Source: Squalus acanthias (Eukaryota). From it: a stretch of DNA of 64,000 nucleotides. Shown in pieces: positions 5,250 through 64,000 of the stretch. Every line of letters starts with the position of its first letter. Position 1 is the first letter of the stretch. Under the pieces are notes generated by a model, which saw nothing but the letters and a program-made list of their open reading frames with translations, had not been told where the DNA came from and searched no databases. The DNA is taken from assembly GCA_030390025.1 (NCBI GenBank), contig CM059452.1, forward strand, positions 9,052,001-9,116,000, read 5' to 3'. Both the position numbers and the translations under genes were made by a program.

Positions 5250-5865
5250 GATAATACAGAGTAAAGCTCCGTATCCACTGCCCTGCCATGCGCTGTATGG
5301 TCAGGTATCGCAAGGAATTGATTCCGAGCAAAGCCAAGTCTACACTGCATTGTCAAACACTCCGGGTAAGGTACCGCAATGGTTAAATACAGAGTATAGC
5401 TCCATCTACATTGCACAAAACACTCCAAGGGCAGGTACAACACGGGCTAGATACAGAGTAAAGTTCCATCTACACTGTCCCGTCAAACACGACCAAGCCA
5501 GGTACAGCATGGGTTAGACACAATGTAAATGCTCCCTCCACACTGTCCCATCAAATGTCACGGGTCAGTTACAGCACGGGTTAAATAAAGCGTAAAGCTC
5601 CCTCTACACTGTCCCATCAAACACTCCCAGGGCAGGTACAGCACGGGTTAGATACAGAGTAAAGCTCCCTCTACACTGTCTCGTCAAACACACCCAGGGC
5701 AGGTACAACACAGGTTAGATACAGAGTAAAGCTCTCTCTACACTGTCCCATCAAACACTGCCAGGGCAGGTACGGCACAGGTTATATGCAGAGTAAAGCT
5801 CTCTCCACACTGTCCCATTAAACACTCCCAGCGCGGGTTAGAAACTGATTAAATTTCCTTCTACA
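5250..5865. repeat. ~59-bp tandem satellite (ctctacactgtcccatcaaacactcccagggcaggtacagcacgggttagatacagagtaaagctcc)
   Basis: About 10 diverged tandem units; the same unit recurs at 16140-16550 and, inverted, at 54270-54455. Confidence 0.9.
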
Positions 5866-16139: not shown

Positions 16140-16720
16140 ATATGTTAGATATCGAGTAAATCTCCCTCTACACTGTCCCATCAAACACTCCCAGGGCAGG
16201 TACAGTACGGGTTAGAAACAGAGTAAAGCTCCCTCTACATTGTCCCATCAAAAACTCCCAGGGCAGGTACAGCACGGGTTAGAAACAGAGTAAAGCTCGC
16301 TCTACACTGTCCCATCAAACACGCCCAGGGCAGGTACAGCACAGGTTAGATACAGAGTAAAGCACCCTCTACACTGTCCCATCAAACACACCCAGGGCAG
16401 GTACAGCACATGTTAGATATCGAGTAAAGCTCCCTCTAAACTGTCCCATCAAACACTTCCAGGGCAGGTACAGCACGGGTTAGATACAGAGTAAAGGTCC
16501 CTCTTCACTGTCCCATCAAACACTCCCAGGGCAGGGACATCACGGGATAGATGTCTGACACAGATGCACCAGTTAGCACAAACCCTGGGGATGATTCCCA
16601 GAGCCTGGGGCCTATCTGACACAGCCTCTCTCCAGCGTTTAGACAGTATTTGAGGGAGAGGAGATGAGGGATCGGGCGGTGTCCACAGACACATTTGGAG
16701 CCTTCTGCGTCCAGTGGGCA
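16140..16720. repeat. 59-bp satellite array plus attached dispersed-repeat segment
   Basis: About 7 units at 16140-16550; adjacent 16550-16640 matches the reverse complement of 54170-54270. Confidence 0.85.
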
Positions 16721-18614
16721 CAACTAGATAAAGGTTGTGATAAAATCAAATTCTAATGGAATATAATATTACTTTAGTTTAGGCCTAGTGTGCGAGTGGA
16801 GCCCTCCTCTCCGGTGGGCACTAGTGGAATATATTTTTGTTTTGGAATCGCCCCTTTAAAGGAGACCCGAGTTCAATTGGTCCACACAGACCAAAGGAGC
16901 AAAGTAGGCCCAGCACTGGGGTAACCACTTCCAAGCCTTCTTCAATCTCAGCCACACCCATAAACCCTGGCCCTCTGTCTCCTGTTTCCCTGACGGCATT
17001 TCTCCCTGCTCTGCTCCATTCCCTATGACATCATCTCCCTGAGCTCACTGAACATCACCCCAGGGATCCTTTCTCCCTGTTCTTGCTCCATTCCCTCTCA
17101 AAGCATCTACCTGAACTCACTGAACATCACCCCAGGGAGCTTTTCTCCCTGCTTTCCTCCATTCCCTCTCATACCATCGACCTGAACTCACTGAACATCA
17201 CATCCGAGATCCGCAGTGAACTTCAGATCTTTGCTCCCTGTTTCCTTCAACTTTCGCTCCACGTCCTTCACCGTCTCATCAGATTAGTTCGGTGACTGCG
17301 TGCCACATGAACATCTCCAGACGTTTCTGGCCAGGCCCGAGTATCTGCGGTTCTGCTCTTCTTTGGAACTCCTTAAATTCAGGCGTGAGGTCTCCCACAG
17401 TTGAATATGACATCGGGTTAAGAGAGGGAAGAATTAACGGACCGTCTGAAGGGAGATTGGGAATGTATGGAATTGGTGCTTTTACTCCGTCTCTGCCACA
17501 ATCTCTCACCCCTCCCCCTATCCGGGGCCGCCATCCTCTCTAATGTCACCCTCGTCTCACATCCCTGTTCCCAGGCTCTCACTGACTCCGGGCTCGGTGA
17601 TTCTCATGGAGTGCAGTGTCCCTTTAAGAGGCCCCGTGCTGCCCCCGCCCCCTCTTCTGGTAATAGGACTGAGTCAGGTGTCACAGGTGCCACAAACTGG
17701 GGCTCTTTAGCGCTGAGCGGAGGCTGGAGACGCCCCGTGATCTCCTAACCCTAAATCAATGGGGGAAACCGCCAATAACGTTGCTGAAACATGCTTAGGG
17801 ATTATGGCGTCATCAACTGCAGGGCAAACCTGCATTGGCGAAGTTTGTGTGACATACAGTCGGTAGTGTTTGTGTGACGTATAACCGCTGCGCGATTGAA
17901 AAACAAATTTACATCAGTTTCCATCAAAATAAATGCTCGATCTTAATCGAGTAAAGTGAAATTCTGGCACAGGAGAGAATAAAAAAGTTGTCATTAAAAG
18001 GTTTTCTGAGGTGCAAATGTGCGGACAGTTCTCCCAGAATGCAGCGCGGCCCGTGTCACAATGGGCCTTTTACCTGTCGCTGTGAATTGTGGGAGCCGCA
18101 GCCCTTCATGACCGAGTCATTAACTCAGTGAATCCAAACCCAAACTCCTTCAGCCGGGAGCTGGCCGGGTTGTTGGTCCGGACAGACTGCGGGTGTCCTG
18201 TTGAGCGGAGAGAATCTCTGAGCAGATTGGACCCCGAATCCGGGAAATCCCAGGAGGTGGAGACCGCTGATCAACCCAAGCGTTGAAAGACGGATTGAAC
18301 CAAAGAAAAGGAAATATGAAACTCTGCTGGTCCCTGTGAAAACAGGCGGACAATAAATATCCTAGGGTGAAATATCAATCGGCAAAATATAAATGTTTCA
18401 GTTGAGAAAACAATTATTTACACAGAAGGAAGTGAAAATGTGGAATAAATGCATCAAATATTTAAACTGGGGAATTGGATAGGAGACATGAAAGAAGGGA
18501 ATATTAAAGGGTGTGAGGAGCGATAAGAAAAGTGTAGACTTGATGGCCTTAATCAGTTGTTTCAGTAGGGTAAAACTCTAAGATTCGTCTAGAATGCATC
18601 CAAGAAGAATATTT

Positions 18615-20569
18615 TTTCTCTCTCTTCGCGCTCTGTATCACTGTGTGTCTGTAATCCTCACCATGTTCAGGTTTGTGAACTCTCTCCGTGCTCTGCATCA
18701 CTGTGTGTCTGTAATCCTCACCATGTTTAGGTTTGTGAACTATCTCCGTGCTCTGTATCACTGTGTGTCTGTAATCCTCACCATGTTCAGGTTTGTGAAC
18801 TCTCTCCGTGCTCTCTATCACTGTGTGTCTGTAATCCCCACCATGTTCAGGTTTGCGAACTCTCTCCGTGCTCTCTATCATTGTGTGTCTGTAATCCTCA
18901 CCATGTTCAGGTTTGTGAACTCTCTCCGTGCTCTGCATCACTGTGTGTCTGTAATCCTCACCATGTTTAGGTTTGTGAACTATCTCCGTGCTCTGTATCA
19001 CTGTGTGTCTGTAATCCTCACCATGTTCAGGTTTGTGAACTCTCTCCGTGCTCTCTATCACTGTGTGTCTGTAATCCCCACCATGTTCAGGTTTGTGAAC
19101 TCTCTCCGTGCTCTGTATCACTGTGTGTCTGTAATCCCCACCATGTTCAGGTTTGTGAACTCTCTCCGTGCTCTGTATCACTGTGTGTCTGTAATCCCCA
19201 CCATGTTCAGGTTTGTGAACTCTCTCCGTGCTCTGTATCACTGTGTGTCTGTAATCCCCACGATGTTCAGGATTGTGAACTCTCTCCGTGCTCTGTATCA
19301 CTGTGTGTCTGTAATCCCCACCATGTTCAGGTTTGTGAACTCTCTCCGTGCTCTGTATCACTGTGTGTCTGTAATCCCCACCATGTTCAGGTTTGTGAAC
19401 TCTCTCCGTGCTCTGTATCACTGTGTGTCTGTAATCCCCACGATGTTCAGGTTTGTGAACTCTCTCCGTGCTCTGTATCACTGTGTGTCTGTAATCCCCA
19501 CCATGTTCAGGTTTGTGAACTCTCTCCGTGCTCTCTATCACTGTGTGTCTGTAATCCCCACCATGTTCAGGTTTGTGAACTCTCTCCGTGCTCTGTATCA
19601 CTGTGTGTCTGTAATCCTCACCATGTTCAGGTTTGTGAACTCTCTCCGTGCTCTCTATCACTGTGTGTCTGTAATCCCCACCATGTTCAGGTTTGTGAAC
19701 TCTCTCCGTGCTCTGTATCACTGTGTGTCTGTAATCCCCACCATGTTCAGGTTTGTGAACTCTCTCCGTGCTCTCTATCACTGTGTGTCTGTAATCCCCA
19801 CCATGTTCAGGTTTGTGAACTCTCTCCGTGCTCTGTATCACTGTGTGTCTGTAATCCCCACCATGTTCAGGTTTGTGAACTCTCTCCGTGCTCTGTATCA
19901 CTGTGTGTCTGTAATCCCCACCATGTTCAGGTTTGTGAACTCTCTCCGTGCTCTGTATCACTGTGTGTCTGTAATCCTCACCATGTTCAGGTTTTTGTAC
20001 GGCTCTCTCCGTGCTCTGTATCACTGTGTGTCTGTAATCCTCACCATGTTCAGGTTTGTGAACTCTCTCCGTGCTCTGTATCACTGTGTGTCTGTAATCC
20101 CCACCATGTTCAGGTTTGTGAACTCTCTCCGTGCTCTGTATCACTGTGTCTGTAATCCTCACCATGTTCAGGTTTGTGAAGCTCTCTCCGTGCTCTGTAT
20201 CACTGTGTCTGTAATCCCCACCATATTCAGGTTTGTGAACTTTCTCCGTGCTCTGTACCAACTTGTGTCTGTAATCCTCACCATGTTCAGCTTTTTGTAC
20301 GGCTCTCTCCGTGCTCTGTATCACTGTGTGTCTGTAATCCCCACCATGTTCAGGTTTGTGAACTCTCTCCGTGCTCTGTATCACTGTGTCTGTAATCCCC
20401 ACCATGTTCAGGTTTGTGAACTCTCTCCGTGCTCTGTATCACTGTGTGTCTGTAATCCCCACCATGTTCAGGTTTGTGAACTCTCTCCGTGCTCTGTATC
20501 ACTGTGTGTCTGTAATCCCCACCATGTTCAGGTTTTTGTACGGCTCTCTCCGTGCTCTGTATCACTGTG
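18615..20569 (-). repeat. Tandem array of ~33 RSS-derived units (mostly 60 bp, three of 63-bp type)
   Basis: Each unit is CACAGTG + spacer + nonamer-like + 24-nt linker; heptamers counted from 18639 to 20563. Confidence 0.95.
20531..20569 (-). other. 23-RSS of the supporting V-delta
   Basis: CACAGTG (20569-20563), 23-nt spacer, ACAAAAACC (20539-20531): full consensus. Confidence 0.95.
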
Positions 20570-20875
20570 CTGTGCGCGGACTCAGTGCACAGTAATACAC
20601 AGCGGAGTCACTCAGTTGCAGTTTCGCGATGTTTAACCGGCTGATTTTCTGCGCACCATCGACAGAAGCAGAAATTCGGCCCCCGGCAGCGTTTTCTTTA
20701 TTCCCCTCTCCTGAAGTGTGTCTCTGGAGCAGGTATTTCGGAGCCTGCCCTAGGGACTGACGGTACCAGTGTACTGTGTGCTGACAGAACCCTGAATATT
20801 CGCAGCTTAAAGTAACGGTGTCTCCGGCAGCAGAGGATTGTAGAGGCGGACCCTGGGACACCGAGAAACTGGAAT
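20570..20875 (-). CDS. TRDV: NAR-TCR supporting TCR-delta V exon
   Basis: Open V domain TLSCEYSGFCQHTVHWYRQ...DSAVYYCALS with extra CDR1 Cys; ctgcag acceptor; no functional leader; lies downstream of NAR-type V-D-J. Confidence 0.9.
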
Positions 20876-21039
20876 CTGCAGGATTAAAATGGAGAAATGT
20901 TATTTATTTGGCTGCTGTTTACCCGGGGACACTTGTCAATCACAGGAATAGTTCTGCGTCTCGCGGTAATGCTGTGCTTCATTTGAAGCCTGTTCCAACT
21001 TTATTCACTGTCATTGGCAAAAGCACCGGCGTGGGGAGG

Positions 21040-22325: not shown

Positions 22326-23236
22326 AATGTGTGGATTGCTGCTGATGTCTTTTCTCAGGAGTGCAAGAAATCCAAAGCTGAGAAAAGGGCCGGAGCCCAA
22401 TCGCAGCCCGTCCCTCCAGTAAATCTCACTGCCCCGGTGTCGGATTGTGCTTTGAACGGCCCAGAGACCGGTGTCTCCACACCCCCGCCCGGCCGGTGAA
22501 GTCCGATATTTCTCTCCCTTTCGGTGAATGATTTCTTGCTGGTTCTAAATGGGCTTCCCTCCAGTCTGTACTTGTTCCCTCGGGTGTTCCTGCTCTCCTT
22601 TATAGGAACATTAGAACCTCGCCCTCACTCGCTCACTGCCCAGTGTTGTTTCAGTTAACAGTAACCAGGGATACAGATAAATTACTGCAATCCGATCTCT
22701 CAAACATGAACATTAAATATTACAGAGAATTACACAGAATGTAGAGCACAGAAACAGGCCATTGGGCCCAATCGGTCCATGCCGGTGTTACTGCTCCACA
22801 CGAGCCTCCTCCCACCCCTACTCCATCTCACCCCATCAACATATCCTTCTATTCCTTTCTCCCTCACCTACTTATCTAGATTCCCCTTCAATGTATCGAT
22901 GTTATTCGGCTCAACTGCTCCTTGTGGCAGCGAGTTCCACATTCTGACCACTCTCTGGGGAAAGAAGTTCCTCCTGAATTCCCCATTGGATTGATTAGAA
23001 AATATCGAACAATATAAATAATATCGAAAATTACCTGTAGTTCGGAGCTTTTACATTTCGACTTAAACGAGAGACATGGAGGTAAAATTATTGTTTATAC
23101 AAAAGCAATTGGAATAAATGTCAGACACAGCACAACTAATTTCAGTCACTGAGTGCCCAATAATGAAATGTGATCTAGACCTACAGGCGGATCTCTTGTA
23201 TCTGAAGCCCCGCCGTGTTGTGCTCCAGTTTTTCTG

Positions 23237-23325
23237 CCGCTGCAGGTATCGGACGGGCCGCTGCAGGTATCGGACGGGCCGCTGCAGGTATCGGACGGGC
23301 CGCTGCAGGTATCGGACGGGCCGCT
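23237..23325. repeat. 21-bp minisatellite (gctgcaggtatcggacgggcc) x4
   Basis: Perfect tandem copies. Confidence 0.9.
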
Positions 23326-23808
23326 GTATTGTTGGGTTCACTCTCCCGGTACCTGATTCACACTGCCCGGCTCGGACTGCAATATCCTGCCCAGGAGGGA
23401 GCTCTGTGACCCCCCTGCCCCCTGCCCTGCTCAGTCAGTTAACACCGAGTGCGGAGGCCTGAGTGCAGACATCTGCGCTCATTTAAACCAACTGGGGATC
23501 AGAGTGAGAGTCCGGGATGTTCATCGGATCTCCGAGGTCCCCGTTAAATCAATGATGGTCCAGATGGGGTCAAACCCCCCAGACTGCCTGCTCCGTGGGG
23601 GTCTCACACCTCCTCTCTCCGGACTCACACCCGGACCCGAACCCGGTTCATATTCTGCTCCCCAATCTAAAACTGTAATGGAAAAGCCCCCTTATAAAAT
23701 CGCTCTGTTTTATTTGAAGGGGTTGAGGTGATACTGATCACAATAATAAACTGACGGTGAACATTAACCGGGACAGTCTGTAACACGGCGGGGTTTGGAG
23801 TCACTTAC

Positions 23809-23904
23809 CGGCTGTGACAGTCACCACCGTCCCGGATCCATCCACAGTATCATATTTATAATAACCACAGTGACACCGCTCTCAGTCACCCCGGTACAAG
23901 AACC
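23809..23904 (-). CDS. NAR-TCR J segment (23809-23865) with 23-RSS (23866-23904)
   Basis: YYKYDTVDGSGTVVTVTA, NAR-like GxGTVVTV; GTAAG donor; CACAGTG-23-ACAAGAACC. Confidence 0.9.
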
Positions 23905-24219: not shown

Positions 24220-24288
24220 GGTATTTGCTCAGGTCTCAGCCACTGTGAGGTTCCAGTAAACACAGTGTTTCAAGTCAGCATCAAATCC
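24220..24288 (-). CDS. NAR-TCR D segment (24248-24260, TTTACTGGAACCT) flanked by two 12-RSS
   Basis: ggtatttgc-12-cactgtg and cacagtg-12-atcaaatcc; open in all three frames; satisfies the 12/23 rule with both V and J. Confidence 0.88.
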
Positions 24289-24611: not shown

Positions 24612-25131
24612 AGTTTTTGTATCGCGGGAAGCCGAGGCCCATCACTGTGTAGTTATCATACTTGTACTCAGCTTTACAGTAATAGGTGGCGCTGTCTTCA
24701 ACTCGCACATCCCGAATTTCCAACGAAAATGTCTTTTCTGCCTTATTAGTCCTCACAACAAATCGCTCCTCACTCGAGATCCGCTCCCACTCTGTCCCGG
24801 TCTGGGTTTGTCTGAAGAAATGTCCACTCGTTAAAGGATTAGCATAAAAACCACCATAGAAAACACAGGTGATGGTGAGAGACTGACACTCCTCCCTGGT
24901 CACCGCTGGCGGGGTCTGTACCACTGAATTACTGAAAGAGCCTGGAAATTAAACAGAGAGAGTTTAATGGGCCATCAGAGCCGAACCACACAACGGGGCT
25001 AAAACCCAGAGAGTGTCCGCAATTCGGATGGACCCGGGCAGTTTTACAGTAAATCCACACAATATCGGTTTGTTTGATCGGTACTCACGGGGTAAACAGA
25101 CACACAGGGTGAAAACAAGGAGGATTCCCAT
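24612..25131 (-). CDS. NAR-TCR V gene: leader 25089-25131, V exon 24650-24941, RSS 24612-24649
   Basis: Leader MGILLVFTLCVCLP with GTGAG donor; short NAR-like V lacking a full CDR2 (VTREECQSLTITC...RVEDSATYYCKA) with extra FR1 Cys; CACAGTG-22-ACAAAAACT. Confidence 0.9.
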
Positions 25132-36327: not shown

Positions 36328-36823
36328 ATGCGGCTATTCAGCGCCTGGGTTGTGTTTATGGTGTTTATTGTCGGTAAGGATGAATCGAATCAATTCGTTT
36401 TCAAACCAAAGTGTTAATATTATTTCAGCTTTTAATGCTCGGTCTTATCTTGTTACTGAACACATGTTACAGATCAGAGTGATGGAGATTCTGTTACTCA
36501 GTCCCAGACTTCAGTCAGCAGCAGAGAAGGTGAAGCGCTGACTATAAGATGTACCGACAGTACCACAGCCAGCAGCTATTATTTATATTGGTACCGGCAC
36601 CAACCAGAGAAGGAGCCCCAGTTTGTAATCAGCAGACGGTCTTGGGACGCACGTGAACTGAGAGGAGAAGGTTTCGGAATCCGTTTCTCTGCTGAGCTCC
36701 AGACCTCGACTAAACTCACCAGTTTAACCATCTCTGGGCTGCAGCTGACTGACGCTGCCGTGTATTACTGCGCTCTCTGGGACTCACAGTGATGGAAAGC
36801 AGTCTCAGCCCTGCACAAAAACT
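36328..36823 (+). CDS. TCR alpha/delta V gene, intact (leader 36328-36373, V 36473-36784, RSS 36785-36823)
   Basis: Leader MRLFSAWVVFMVFIV with GTAAG; GDSVTQSQ...TIRCTDSTTASSYYLYWYRH...LQLTDAAVYYCALWD (not in ORF track); CACAGTG-23-ACAAAAACT. Confidence 0.93.
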
Positions 36824-43707: not shown

Positions 43708-44018
43708 TTTGTAGTGGGATTGTGCCCTGGGCTATAGGACGGGTTGTAGTGGGATTCTGCTCAGGGCTATAGGACGGGTTGTAGTGGGATTCTGCTCAGG
43801 GCTATAGGACGGGGTGTAGTGGGATTGTGCTCAGGGCTATAGGACGGGGTGTAGTGGGATTGTGCCCTGGGCTATAGGACGGGTTGTAGTGGGATTCTGC
43901 TCAGGGCTATAGGACGGGGTGTAGTGGGATTGTGCCCTGGGCTATAGGACGGGGTGTAGTGGGATTGTGCTCGGGGCTATAGGACGGGGTGCTGTGGGAT
44001 TGTGCTCTGGGATATAGG
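43708..44018. repeat. ~35-bp minisatellite (gtagtgggattgtgctcagggctataggacggggt)
   Basis: About 9 tandem units. Confidence 0.9.
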
Positions 44019-54169: not shown

Positions 54170-54455
54170 GCTGGAGAGAGAGCCTGTGTGCCGGATAGGC
54201 CCCAGACTCTGAGAATCATTTCCAGGGTTTGTGCTCCCCAGTGTGTCTGTGTCAGATATCTAACAAGTGTGCAGCTGCCGTGGGAGTGTTTGATGGGACA
54301 GTGTAGAGGGAGCTTTACTCTGTATCTAACCCATGCTGTACCTGCCCTGGGAGTGTTTGATGGGACAGTGTAGAGGGAGCTTTACTCTGTATCTAACAAG
54401 TGTGTACCTGCTCTGGAAGTGTTTGATGGGACAGTGTAGAGGGAGATTTACTCTG
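54170..54455. repeat. Inverted copy of the 59-bp satellite plus attached segment
   Basis: gggagtgtttgatgggacagtgtagagggagctttactctgtatctaac x3. Confidence 0.85.
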
Positions 54456-57304: not shown

Positions 57305-58462
57305 CCTCCCCTCTCTCTGGTGGGGGAGTGGGGGGTACAGTGGCTTCACAATTACCCTTTCCCCTCTCTGGTGGGGGAGTGGGGGTACAGTGGGTTAACA
57401 ATTACCCTTTCCCCTCTCTGGTGGGGGAGTGGGGGGTACAGTGGGTTAACATTGCCCTTTCCCCTCTCTGGTGGGGGAGTGGGGGTACAGTGGGTTAACA
57501 ATTGCCCTTTCCCCTCTCTCTGGTGGGGGAGTGGGGGGTACAGTGGGTTAACAATTGCCCTTTCCCCTCTCTCTGGTGGGGGAGTGGGGGTACAGTGGGT
57601 TAACAATTGTCCCTTTCCCCTCTCTCTTGTGGGGGAGTGGGGGTACAGTGGGTTAACAATTGCCCTTTCCCCTCTCTCTGGTGGGGGAGTGGGGGGTACA
57701 GTAGGTTAACAATTGCCCTTTCCCCTCTCTCTGGTGGGGGAGTGGGGGTACAGTTGGTTAACAATTACCCTTTCCCCTCTCTCTGGTGGGGGAGTGGGGG
57801 TACAGTTGGTTAACAATTGCCCTCTCCCCTCTCTCTGGTGGGGGAGTGGAGGTACAGTGGGTTAACAATTACCCTTTCCCCTCTCTCTGGTGGGGGAGTG
57901 GGGGTACAGTGGGTTAACAATTGCCCTCTCCCCTCTCTCTGGTGGGGGAGAGGGGGGTACAGTGGGTTAACAATTGCTGAGATGAGGAGGAACTACTTCA
58001 CTCAGAGGGTGGTAGGTCCATGGAATATGCTGCCACAAAAAGCTGTAGAAGCTACATCATTAAATAAATTTAAAACAGAAATAGACAGTTTCCTAGAAGT
58101 AAAGGGCATTAAGGGTTACGGGGAGCGGGCAGGAATTTGGACATGAGTCTAGGTTCGGATCGGTCATGGCCCTGTGGGTAGTGGAGCGGGCCCAGGGACC
58201 GTGTAGCCTGATTCTGCTCCTATTTCGTGTGTGCAATTCTGTTAGATGCAGGAGATGGTTCTGTGATAGTAGATAGTAGATTGGCGGTTAGGATCAGATC
58301 AGCCATGATCTTATTGAATGGCGGAGCAGGCTCGAGGGGCCGATTGGCCTACTCCTGCTCCTATTTCTTATGTTCTTTCCCCTCTCTCTGGTGGGGGAGT
58401 GGAGGTACAGTGGGTTAACAATTACCCTTTCCCCTCTCTCTGGTGGGGGAGTGGGGGTACAG
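57305..58462. repeat. ~52-bp G-rich minisatellite interrupted by a CR1 3' end (57977-58376)
   Basis: Unit tggtgggggagtggggggtacagtgggttaacaattgccctttcccctctctc; units resume after the CR1 tail. Confidence 0.9.
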
Positions 58463-62649: not shown

Positions 62650-63190
62650 TTTACATAGAATCTACAACACAGAAACAGGCCACTCGGCCCAACAGGTCGG
62701 TGTTTATGCTCCACATGAGCCTCCTCTCTCCCTACTTCATCTCCCTCATCAACATAACCTTCTATTCATTTCTCCCTCCTGTACCTATCTAGATTCCCCT
62801 GAAACACATCTATGCTGTTTGCCTCAACCACTCCATGTGGTAGCGAGTTCCACATTCTACCCACTCTCTGGGTAAAGAAGTTTCTCCTGAATTCCCTATT
62901 GATTTATTAGTGATTATCTTATATTTATGGCCCCTAGTATCGGGCTCCTCCTCAAGCAGAAATATTGTCGCTATATCTAACCTTTCAACCCCCTTCATAA
63001 TTTTAAAGACCTCTATTCGGTCAACCCACAGACTTCTCTTTTCTAGAAAAAAGATCCCAAACCCGTTCAATCATTCCTGACAGTTACAATTTTTCTTTCT
63101 GGTATCGTCCTTGTAAATCTTTTTTGCACTTCTCCAGTGCCTCTGTATCATTCTTATAATATGGAGACCAGACCTGTACACAGTACACTA
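62650..63190 (-). mobile_element. CR1-type LINE 3' fragment
   Basis: IEVFKIMKG...DTRGHKYKI. Confidence 0.8.
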
Positions 63191-64000
63191 AGTGTGATAT
63201 GGAAACCAAAACTATAGGCAGTACACTCAGTGTTATATGGAGACCAGGCCTGTACACAGCAATCTTTGTGTGATATGGAGACCAGACCTCTACTCAGCAA
63301 TCTATGTGTGATATGGAGACCAGACCTCTACTCAGCAATCTTTGTGTGATATGGAGACCAGACCTCTACTCAGCAATCTATGTGTGATATGGAGACCAGA
63401 CCTGTACACAGTACTCTAAGTGTGATATGGAGACCAGACCTGTGCACAGTACTCTAAGTGTGATATGGATACCCGACCTGTGCACAGTGCTCTAAGTGTG
63501 ATATGGAGACCAGACCTGTGCACAGTGCTCTAAGTGTGATATGGATACCCGACCTGTGCACAGTGCTCTAAGTGTGATATGGAGACCAGACCTGTGCACA
63601 GCACTCTCAGTGTGATATGGAGACCAGACCTGTGCACAGTGCTCTAAGTGTGATATGGAGACCAGACCTGTGGACAGTGCTCTAAGTGTGATATGGAGAC
63701 CAGACCTGTGGACAGTGCTCTAAGTGTGATATGGAGACCAGACCTGTGGACAGTGCTCTAAGTGTGATATGGAGCCCAGACCTGTGCACAGTACTCTAAG
63801 TGTGATATGGAGATCAGACCTGTGCACAGCACTCTGTGTGATATGGAGACCAGACCTGTACACAGTGCTCTAAGTGTGATATGGAGACCAGACCTGTACA
63901 CAGTACTCTAAGTGTGATATGGAGACCAGACCTGTACACAGTGCTCTAAGTGTGATATGGAGACCAGACCTGTACACAGTGCTCTAAGTGTGATATGGAG
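63160..64000. repeat. 39-bp minisatellite derived from CR1 ORF2 sequence
   Basis: Unit gtgtgatatggagaccagacctgtgcacagtgctctaa, the reverse complement of HLEYCVQ.WSPY-coding DNA; runs off-window. Confidence 0.9.

What the first reader, a model, noticed from the sequence alone, without database searches (positions are those of the whole stretch)
18615..20569. Tandem array of ~33 recombination signal sequences amplified from the supporting V-delta 23-RSS
Seen: the ~1.95 kb 'minisatellite' unit is the RSS itself (CACAGTG-spacer-nonamer plus a 24-nt linker), head-to-tail and in the same orientation as the V's RSS. About 31 of 33 units keep a perfect heptamer. Three have a 23-nt spacer: the genuine one (20531-20569), 20290-20328 (ACAAAAAGC) and 19990-20028 (perfect ACAAAAACC). 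The homogenised majority has a 3-nt shorter spacer and TCACAAACC. Repeat similarity starts exactly at the first C of the V's heptamer, the RAG nick position. Established: RAG needs CAC and 12/23 spacing, and germline-joined Ig genes imply germline RAG activity in sharks. Inference: the array may derive from RAG signal-end repair followed by expansion. It could act as a RAG-loading platform or a decoy field tuning NAR-TCR use. Joins at the extra RSSs would be non-productive (in-frame TGA at the first heptamer) but would leave the true RSS available for a second round. I know of no described RSS tandem array of this kind, but cannot search.
Basis: partly seen in the sequence, partly recalled or inferred. 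Interest (0 to 1): 0.9.

Follow-up and report, generated by a model that had tools for sequence, protein, structure and literature searches.

The report
RSS-derived minisatellite behind shark V gene
A 2-kb run of 33 head-to-tail copies of a T-cell-receptor gene's recombination signal sits directly behind that gene, and it looks like one small block of a much more abundant repeat family, not a purpose-built device.

Summary
TRF finds one array at 18620-20569 (period 60, 32.4 copies, 95% matches). On the minus strand there are 33 units starting at the heptamer of a V 23-RSS. 31 of 33 keep CACAGTG, and 3 of 33 (units 1, 5, 10) are 63 bp with a 23-nt spacer. The V is the leaderless second V of a NAR-TCR cassette.

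The monomer is clearly the V's RSS plus 24 nt of flank. However, 29 of 33 units have a 20- or 21-nt spacer, so they fail 12/23 spacing. The heptamer is not conserved more than the linker. There are no head-to-head heptamers. The array shows an ordinary minisatellite pattern: a homogenised core, variant edges and a 240-bp higher-order block.

Contigs of four public runs under three organism labels lay 230-1640 unit-like contigs on the proximal 935 bp. Summed k-mer depth there is roughly 400-2000 times that of the V-RSS junction, where this locus allows at most 23. Most copies therefore lie elsewhere.

Unchecked first-reader notes of this scan list RSS-like arrays and satellites up to 37 kb on other pieces of this genome. 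I found no published description.

The parts
18618..20569 (-). Tandem array of 33 units (32 full, last truncated after about 28 nt). Unit = heptamer, spacer, nonamer, 24-nt linker.
   Evidence: TRF; unit table; unit alignment.
20531..20569 (-). Genuine 23-RSS of the V (unit 1): CACAGTG, 23-nt spacer, ACAAAAACC.
   Evidence: Contigs cross from this RSS into the V exon in X1 (20520-20726, 0 differences), X6 (20510-20779, 2 differences) and X9 (20544-20648, 0 differences).
20290..20328 (-). Extra canonical-format 23-RSS (unit 5), nonamer ACAAAAAGC (8 of 9).
   Evidence: Weak contig support: bin 20286-20317 has depth 0 in X1, X6 and X9, and 170.8 in X3.
19990..20028 (-). Extra canonical-format 23-RSS (unit 10), nonamer ACAAAAACC (9 of 9).
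19066..19965 (-). Homogenised core (units 11-25): 9 of these 15 units are identical to the 60-bp consensus.
18646..19065 (-). Distal part with a 240-bp higher-order repeat: units 26, 27, 28 equal units 30, 31, 32.
   Evidence: identical classes u16/u26/u30, u27/u31, u28/u32.
20570..20875 (-). Supporting V exon (V-set, ends ...YYCALSPRT). It has no leader and is preceded by an AG acceptor at 20877-20876, phase 1.
   Evidence: Sequence; ORF; V-set Pfam on relatives; V-domain PDB matches.
23809..23865 (-). NAR-type J segment with a 23-RSS upstream (heptamer 23866-23872) and a phase-1 GT donor after 23809.
   Evidence: Read; RSS scan.
24248..24260 (-). 13-nt D element flanked by heptamers on both sides (3' 12-RSS at 24220-24247).
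   Evidence: Read; RSS scan.
24650..24924 (-). NAR-type V exon with its own RSS (heptamer 24643-24649, 22-nt spacer).
   Evidence: Best PDB matches are VNAR domains, E 3.6e-16 and below.

Best explanation
This is a minisatellite whose monomer descends from the 23-RSS of a NAR-TCR supporting V gene plus the 24 nt that followed it. It is one small block of a much more abundant satellite family. Inferred history: a 63-bp segment starting at the heptamer was duplicated in tandem. A variant with a 3-nt spacer deletion and two nonamer changes arose. That 60-bp form was amplified and homogenised by replication slippage and unequal exchange, here and at other places in this and related genomes. The V keeps its canonical RSS (unit 1) and should rearrange normally. 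Two more units (5 and 10) have canonical 23-RSS format. If RAG used them, the join would retain the first RSS and its in-frame TGA. The other 29 full units have the wrong spacer length and would at most act as heptamer-only cryptic sites. No dedicated function is needed to explain the array. Shown here: the anatomy, the spacer lengths, the pattern of variants and the abundance elsewhere. Inferred: the order of events, the growth mechanism and neutrality.
For: Homology of the 60-bp and 63-bp forms. Spacer 23 in 3 of 33 units; spacer 20 in 28, 21 in 1, and 1 truncated. Minisatellite pattern: 13 of 33 units are identical to the consensus and lie mainly in the centre, length variants (58, 59, 63 bp) occur only in the ten V-proximal units, there is a 240-bp higher-order block at the far end, and a variant alternates in units 14, 16 and 18. 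Among the 26 full 60-bp units there are 25 differences from consensus: heptamer 1 (2.9 expected), nonamer 2 (3.8), spacer 10 (8.3), linker 12 (10.0), so no sparing of RAG-relevant parts. There are 0 head-to-head heptamers. Abundance: 348, 1640, 230 and 601 contigs were laid on 935 bp in X1, X3, X6 and X9, where this stretch alone gives 22 unitigs at k=31. Top summed depth on consensus units was 129,476 / 425,850 / 19,118 / 100,374, against 315.8 / 718.8 / 32.1 / 49 at the V-RSS junction. No 31-mer occurs more than 23 times in this array. Loose ends show units joined to other flanks. One matches this array's distal flank at the same junction point, so at least one paralogous array exists. In the window, 1 of 5 V RSSs carries an array.
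Against: The tool itself warns that contig depth is summed and is no copy number, and sequencing errors at high depth inflate contig counts. I could not read the rest of the genome, so I do not know whether the other copies lie behind V genes or elsewhere. Similarity starts exactly at the RAG nick position. A random duplication boundary would hit that point about once in 60; I explain it only loosely by the CA-rich junction. 31 of 33 perfect heptamers is compatible with selection as well as with recent homogenisation. The unit and the V-RSS junction recur under three organism labels, which could mean conservation. No data on RAG binding, cleavage or joins were available.
Confidence: 0.7

Rival explanations
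1. The array is a selected regulatory device. It would be a field of decoy or loading sites that holds RAG near the supporting V, or diverts it, and so tunes NAR-TCR use or permits a second round of rearrangement.
For: 31 of 33 perfect heptamers in the V's orientation, about 66 times the heptamer density of the rest of the window (15.9 versus 0.24 per kb). Two extra canonical-format 23-RSSs lie 241 and 541 bp beyond the true one. The unit and the V-RSS junction occur in runs under three organism labels. Satellite-borne cryptic signals can be cut by RAG in mouse (PMC2193808, passages read).
Against: 29 of 33 units have 20- or 21-nt spacers, and their nonamer score at 12 or 23 spacing is 1-5 of 9. 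Heptamer and nonamer are not conserved above the linker. Contigs with the same V 3' end but a different RSS and no such unit exist in X1, X6 and X9 (loose ends at 20581). The unit is far more abundant than the V junction. Extra-RSS unit 5 has almost no contig support.
Confidence: 0.1
2. The array was started by RAG acting in the germ line. A cut at the V/heptamer border would have been followed by aberrant repair or re-insertion of signal-end DNA, and later expanded.
For: Similarity begins exactly at the first C of the heptamer. Compared with contigs from paralogues, this V's coding end differs from about 11 nt before the heptamer and is about 8 nt longer and GC-rich (loose ends at 20581; read by eye). 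Germ-line RAG activity in cartilaginous fish is established (PMC2193156, listing and abstract only).
Against: Signal joints are head-to-head, and none is present (0 matches). All units are head-to-tail, which slippage or unequal exchange explains directly. The linker-heptamer junction is CA-rich, a slippage-prone context. The paralogue comparison may involve a different V subfamily.
Confidence: 0.07
3. The satellite came first, and this V acquired its present RSS by recombination with a neighbouring array.
For: The 60-bp form is vastly more abundant than the 63-bp form. Contigs with the same V 3' end carry a different RSS.
Against: Unit 1 has a consensus heptamer, a 23-nt spacer and a perfect nonamer, the format of the other 23-RSSs in the window, while the abundant form is degraded. 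Canonical to degraded is the simpler direction.
Confidence: 0.05
4. Assembly artefact: the array is misplaced or its length is wrong at this locus.
For: No read spans it. Only k=31 contigs were available. Units 5-7 have zero depth in X1 and X6.
Against: Contigs from three organism labels run from the V exon through the true RSS into the linker and stop where the graph must branch (X1 20520-20726, X6 20510-20779, X9 20544-20648). Contigs of 90-138 bp cross unit boundaries. X3, a second sample and study of the same organism label, holds the units. The window has no N.
Confidence: 0.05

Closest known systems
Minisatellite / satellite DNA grown by slippage and unequal exchange
   Same: Head-to-tail 60-bp units at 95% identity. 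Homogenised centre, variant edges, higher-order 240-bp block, truncated last unit, many more copies elsewhere.
   Different: The monomer is recognisably a bona fide antigen-receptor recombination signal plus its flank, and the array starts at the heptamer of a live-looking V gene.
Cryptic recombination signals in mouse gamma-satellite DNA (Cowell et al. 2003, PMC2193808; passages read)
   Same: An abundant tandem repeat whose units contain heptamer-spacer-nonamer-like sequences. In that paper two of three tested units recombined on plasmids (0.6% and 0.02%), and breaks at heptamers rose when RAG was induced.
   Different: The mouse signals are chance resemblances inside a 234-bp centromeric repeat, not descendants of a V-gene RSS, and have 23-nt format. 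Here descent from a V RSS is evident, but most units have a 20-nt spacer. No cleavage data exist here.
Isolated cryptic or secondary RSSs used for editing or locus inactivation (VH-replacement heptamer, kappa-deleting element; recalled, not from a call)
   Same: Extra signals near a V gene that could give secondary or non-productive joins. Units 5 and 10 could in principle act so.
   Different: Those are single conserved sites with demonstrated use. Here there is a 33-unit array with no usage data and mostly wrong spacing.
NAR-TCR doubly rearranging TCR-delta genes (Criscitiello et al. 2006; cited in PMC12227049, passages read; the 2006 paper was not held)
   Same: The context matches: NAR-type V, D and J, then a leaderless supporting V with its own 23-RSS.
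   Different: The passages I could read do not mention repeated RSSs ('tandem' occurs 0 times in PMC12227049). I could not read the original description.

Membership tests
Functional 23-RSS (RAG substrate) | Heptamer beginning CAC | tested here: met
   32 of 33 units keep CAC and 31 of 33 are CACAGTG.
Functional 23-RSS (RAG substrate) | Spacer of 23 (or 12) nt, give or take 1 | tested here: not met
   Met by 3 of 33 units (1, 5, 10). The others: 28 units with 20 nt, 1 unit with 21 nt, 1 truncated. The tolerance of about 1 nt is recalled knowledge.
Functional 23-RSS (RAG substrate) | A-rich nonamer close to ACAAAAACC | tested here: inconclusive
   9, 8 and 9 of 9 in units 1, 5 and 10. 7 of 9 in 27 units, 6 of 9 in 2 units, none in unit 33. 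At 12 or 23 spacing the short units score 1-5 of 9.
Functional 23-RSS (RAG substrate) | Cleavage or joining by RAG | not testable with these tools
   Only DNA contigs were served, and no joints were listed.
Minisatellite / satellite DNA | Head-to-tail units with high identity | tested here: met
   Period 60, 32.4 copies, 95% matches.
Minisatellite / satellite DNA | Signs of unequal exchange: homogenised core, variant edges, higher-order repeats | tested here: met
   13 of 33 units are identical. All length variants lie in units 1-10. Units 26-28 equal units 30-32.
Minisatellite / satellite DNA | Copies at other places in the genome | tested here: met
   230-1640 contigs laid where this stretch gives 22 unitigs. 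Depth ratio to the V junction is about 400-2000, against a maximum of 23 from this locus. Loose ends show other flanks. Caveat: contig depth is not a copy number. None elsewhere in the 64-kb window.
RAG signal joint / excision product | Two heptamers fused head-to-head | tested here: not met
   0 matches to either head-to-head heptamer pair in the window.
NAR-TCR cassette (context) | NAR-type V with its own D and J, spliced to a leaderless supporting V | tested here: met
   VNAR structures are the top PDB matches, E 3.6e-16. D and J with RSSs and a phase-1 donor. Phase-1 acceptor directly before the supporting V exon. Expression was not tested.

The most novel reading that the evidence does not exclude
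Recombination signals of antigen-receptor genes have seeded a whole satellite family in this elasmobranch lineage. It would run from 2-kb arrays behind supporting V-delta genes to blocks of tens of kb beside germline-joined genes, as unchecked notes of this scan suggest. These arrays would be RAG-accessible: they would mark, or result from, germ-line RAG activity, and in lymphocytes act as a large sink or cryptic-site field that shapes V usage and genome stability.
Probability: 0.1. Interest if true: 0.85.

Novelty: new variant of a known kind. Interest (0 to 1): 0.5.

Why it matters
An ordinary satellite mechanism has here copied a real V(D)J signal dozens of times next to a working-looking V gene, and apparently thousands of times in the genome. 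This offers a natural test of how strictly RAG obeys spacer length and how it handles dense heptamer fields in chromatin it scans. In a lineage known for germ-line RAG activity, it is also a possible source of off-target breaks or germ-line rearrangements. If the arrays are inert, they are still a practical warning for annotating shark TCR loci and for RSS-based gene finders.

Tried and rejected
Protein route to other species. The supporting V exon gave one close relative (P0001, 72% identity), whose sequence stops before the RSS.

Metagenome scans with two unit patterns found 0 matches.

The array's open frame on the minus strand found no candidate. The plus-strand frame found 175 proteins at E up to 0.001. 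All listed hits were 15-47% identical long repeat proteins, which I take as periodicity artefacts of a 20-residue leucine-rich repeat and not as the satellite.

The PDB search with the supporting V only showed it is a V domain. Multi-V constructs topped the list.

The unit is not related to the other seven tandem-repeat families tested in the window: local alignment scores were within the shuffle range.

I considered and rejected reading the 60-bp unit as a 12-RSS or a 23-RSS in another register or on the other strand. Nonamer scores there are 1-5 of 9, and the plus-strand reading has no nonamer in the right orientation (by eye).

A formal RIC score could not be computed, because the model is not available here.

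The search of earlier findings by sequence was blank.

Papers. Eight searches found no description of an RSS tandem array or RSS-derived satellite. One search returned only unrelated hits. PMC1458790 and PMC7909615 were not held. I asked for no supplementary files. The locus maps in the supplements of PMC12227049 might bear on whether such arrays were seen.

Full report
OBSERVATION. Tandem Repeats Finder reports a single array at 18620-20569: period 60, 32.4 copies, 95% matches, 1% indels, score 3472. Read on the minus strand and split at the heptamer, it has 33 units. Twenty-seven are 60 bp (counting the truncated last one), three are 63 bp, two are 58 bp and one is 59 bp. 31 of 33 units carry CACAGTG and 32 of 33 keep CAC. 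Units 1 (20569-20507), 5 (20328-20266) and 10 (20028-19966) have a 23-nt spacer and the nonamers ACAAAAACC, ACAAAAAGC and ACAAAAACC. In the short units the best nonamer is TCACAAACC, at spacer 20 in 26 units and spacer 21 in one; two more spacer-20 units have one further change. Probes for the linker and the spacer hit only inside the array (32 and 33 matches, 0 expected in 100 shuffles). The window has no N.

CONTEXT. The V exon next to the array (20875-20570, minus strand) ends ...YYCALSPRT. It has no leader and is preceded directly by an AG acceptor in phase 1 (ORF). About 3 kb upstream on the same strand lie three segments:
- a J segment (23865-23809) with a 23-RSS and a phase-1 GT donor;
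- a 13-nt D (24260-24248) flanked by heptamers;
- a V exon (24924-24650) whose best solved relatives are VNAR domains (E 3.6e-16 and below).
This is the architecture of a doubly rearranging NAR-TCR delta cassette as summarised in PMC12227049 (passages), so 'supporting V-delta' is a fair name. No tool named the organism. I infer a cartilaginous fish from these features.

ARE THE UNITS RECOMBINATION SIGNALS? Only 3 of 33 have 12/23-rule spacing. At 12 or 23 spacing the short units score 1-5 of 9 against the consensus nonamer. From recalled knowledge, spacer changes of more than about one base strongly reduce recombination. Most units are therefore at best heptamer-only cryptic sites. Units 5 and 10 are canonical in format.

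HOW DID IT GROW? The 60-bp form equals the 63-bp form minus 3 nt of spacer, with two nonamer changes. Several features are the usual marks of slippage and unequal exchange:
- Thirteen of 33 units are identical to the consensus and cluster in the centre.
- All length variants lie in the ten V-proximal units.
- Units 26-28 recur as units 30-32, a 240-bp higher-order block.
- One spacer variant alternates in units 14, 16 and 18.
Among the 26 full 60-bp units, the 25 differences from consensus fall as follows: 1 in the heptamer (2.9 expected), 2 in the nonamer (3.8), 10 in the spacer (8.3) and 12 in the linker (10.0). The RAG-relevant parts are thus not specially protected. No head-to-head heptamer pair, the mark of a signal joint, occurs in the window. 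The other four V-gene RSSs in the window are single.

BOUNDARIES. Ungapped similarity between the V coding end and the linker end stops at the first C of the heptamer. The junction between units is CA-rich. The far end is a unit cut after about 28 nt (18645-18618) and joined to unique DNA. This needs a later deletion or a more complex origin. A loose end in run X1 shows another copy in which 25 letters match the window's distal flank at 18591-18615 and join a unit at the same point (compared by eye). At least one paralogous array therefore shares this boundary.

COPIES ELSEWHERE. The look-up of sequencing runs listed 20 holders in 10 studies under nine coded organism labels plus one metagenome. 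It then laid 19966-20900 on Logan contigs of X1 and X3 (organism A, two samples and studies), X6 (organism B) and X9 (organism E). 348, 1640, 230 and 601 contigs were laid, of which 259, 1403, 186 and 536 fit two places. The same 935 bases give only 22 unitigs at k=31, and 18300-20900 gives 43. Top summed depth on consensus units was 129,476 (X1), 425,850 (X3), 19,118 (X6) and 100,374 (X9). At the V-RSS junction the figures were 315.8 (X1 contig 20520-20726, 0 differences), 718.8 (X3 bin 20542-20573), 32.1 (X6 contig 20510-20779, 2 differences) and 49 (X9 contig 20544-20648, 0 differences). The ratios are about 400-2000, while no 31-mer occurs more than 23 times in this array.

The tool warns that contig depth is summed and is no copy number, and errors at high depth inflate contig counts, so these are orders of magnitude only. 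Even so, most copies of the unit must lie outside this array, and the unit and the V-RSS junction occur under three organism labels. Against my reading, and against the locus as assembled, bins 20190-20317 (units 5-7, including most of the extra RSS of unit 5) have depth 0 in X1 and X6 and 0-208 in X3 and X9. The tool says a hole proves nothing. Loose ends at 20581 in X1, X6 and X9 show contigs with the same V 3' end but a different RSS and no such unit. All runs were contigs, so no joints, RNA evidence or spanning reads could be obtained.

EARLIER NOTES OF THIS SCAN (unchecked; only titles were shown). These list:
- five RSS heptamers behind another supporting V-delta, 1.1 Mb away;
- a 279-nt RSS array on another piece;
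- satellites of 4 to more than 37 kb 'made of' RSS-like monomers on other pieces, several beside germline-joined genes.
They fit the abundance seen, but I could not read those places, so identity of the monomers is not established.

LITERATURE. Eight searches found no described RSS tandem array or RSS-derived satellite, and no paper printing the spacer sequence. The closest precedent is Cowell et al. 2003 (PMC2193808, passages read). That paper reports cryptic 23-signals in the mouse gamma-satellite repeat that recombine on plasmids and are cut when RAG is induced. The original NAR-TCR paper and a 2021 locus paper were not held, and the library lacks most subscription journals, so absence from print is not proven.

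VERDICT. The most likely explanation (0.7) is an RSS-derived minisatellite belonging to an abundant satellite family, grown by slippage and unequal exchange. It contains three RAG-format signals and about 29 mis-spaced ones. A selected decoy or loading role (0.1), a germ-line RAG origin (0.07), capture of the RSS from a pre-existing satellite (0.05) and an assembly artefact (0.05) remain open. It is a new variant of a known kind. Its interest lies in being a natural substrate for testing RAG specificity, and in the possible family-wide link to germ-line rearrangement.

Noticed in passing
window 20570-20581 (minus strand, V coding end): Contigs in X1, X6 and X9 share this V's 3' end up to 20581 but then carry a shorter coding end and a different RSS spacer. 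This V has about 8 extra, GC-rich nucleotides before the heptamer (by eye). This may be a subfamily difference or a trace of an old open-and-shut event.
   Followed up: partly
window 18549-20405 (-) and 18594-20636 (+): Because 60 is a multiple of 3, the array is open for 618 and 680 codons on the two strands. The plus-frame 20-residue repeat draws weak matches to long repeat proteins (15-47% identity). This is a trap for gene finders.
   Followed up: yes
window 63159-64000: A 38-bp tandem array of at least 22 copies at 91% identity runs off the window end. Its unit contains a CACAGTA heptamer-like word but no nonamer at 12 spacing by eye.
   Followed up: no
window 5353-5838, 16144-16552, 54257-54455: Three arrays of one 66-67-bp repeat family, the third in inverted orientation. 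Unrelated to the RSS unit (one search tested the 16144 copy).
   Followed up: partly
window 23236-23326: A perfect 21-bp repeat, 4.3 copies at 100% identity, inside the intron between the NAR J and the supporting V.
   Followed up: no
window 57307-57977 and 43710-44018: Further minisatellites: 52/105 bp x12.9 and 35 bp x8.8. The window is minisatellite-rich, which raises the base rate for an array forming at any given site.
   Followed up: no
window 36460-36823 (+), 40367-39915 (-), about 42949 (-): Three more V genes with single 23-RSSs on both strands. The mixed orientation implies some inversional joining in this part of the locus.
   Followed up: no
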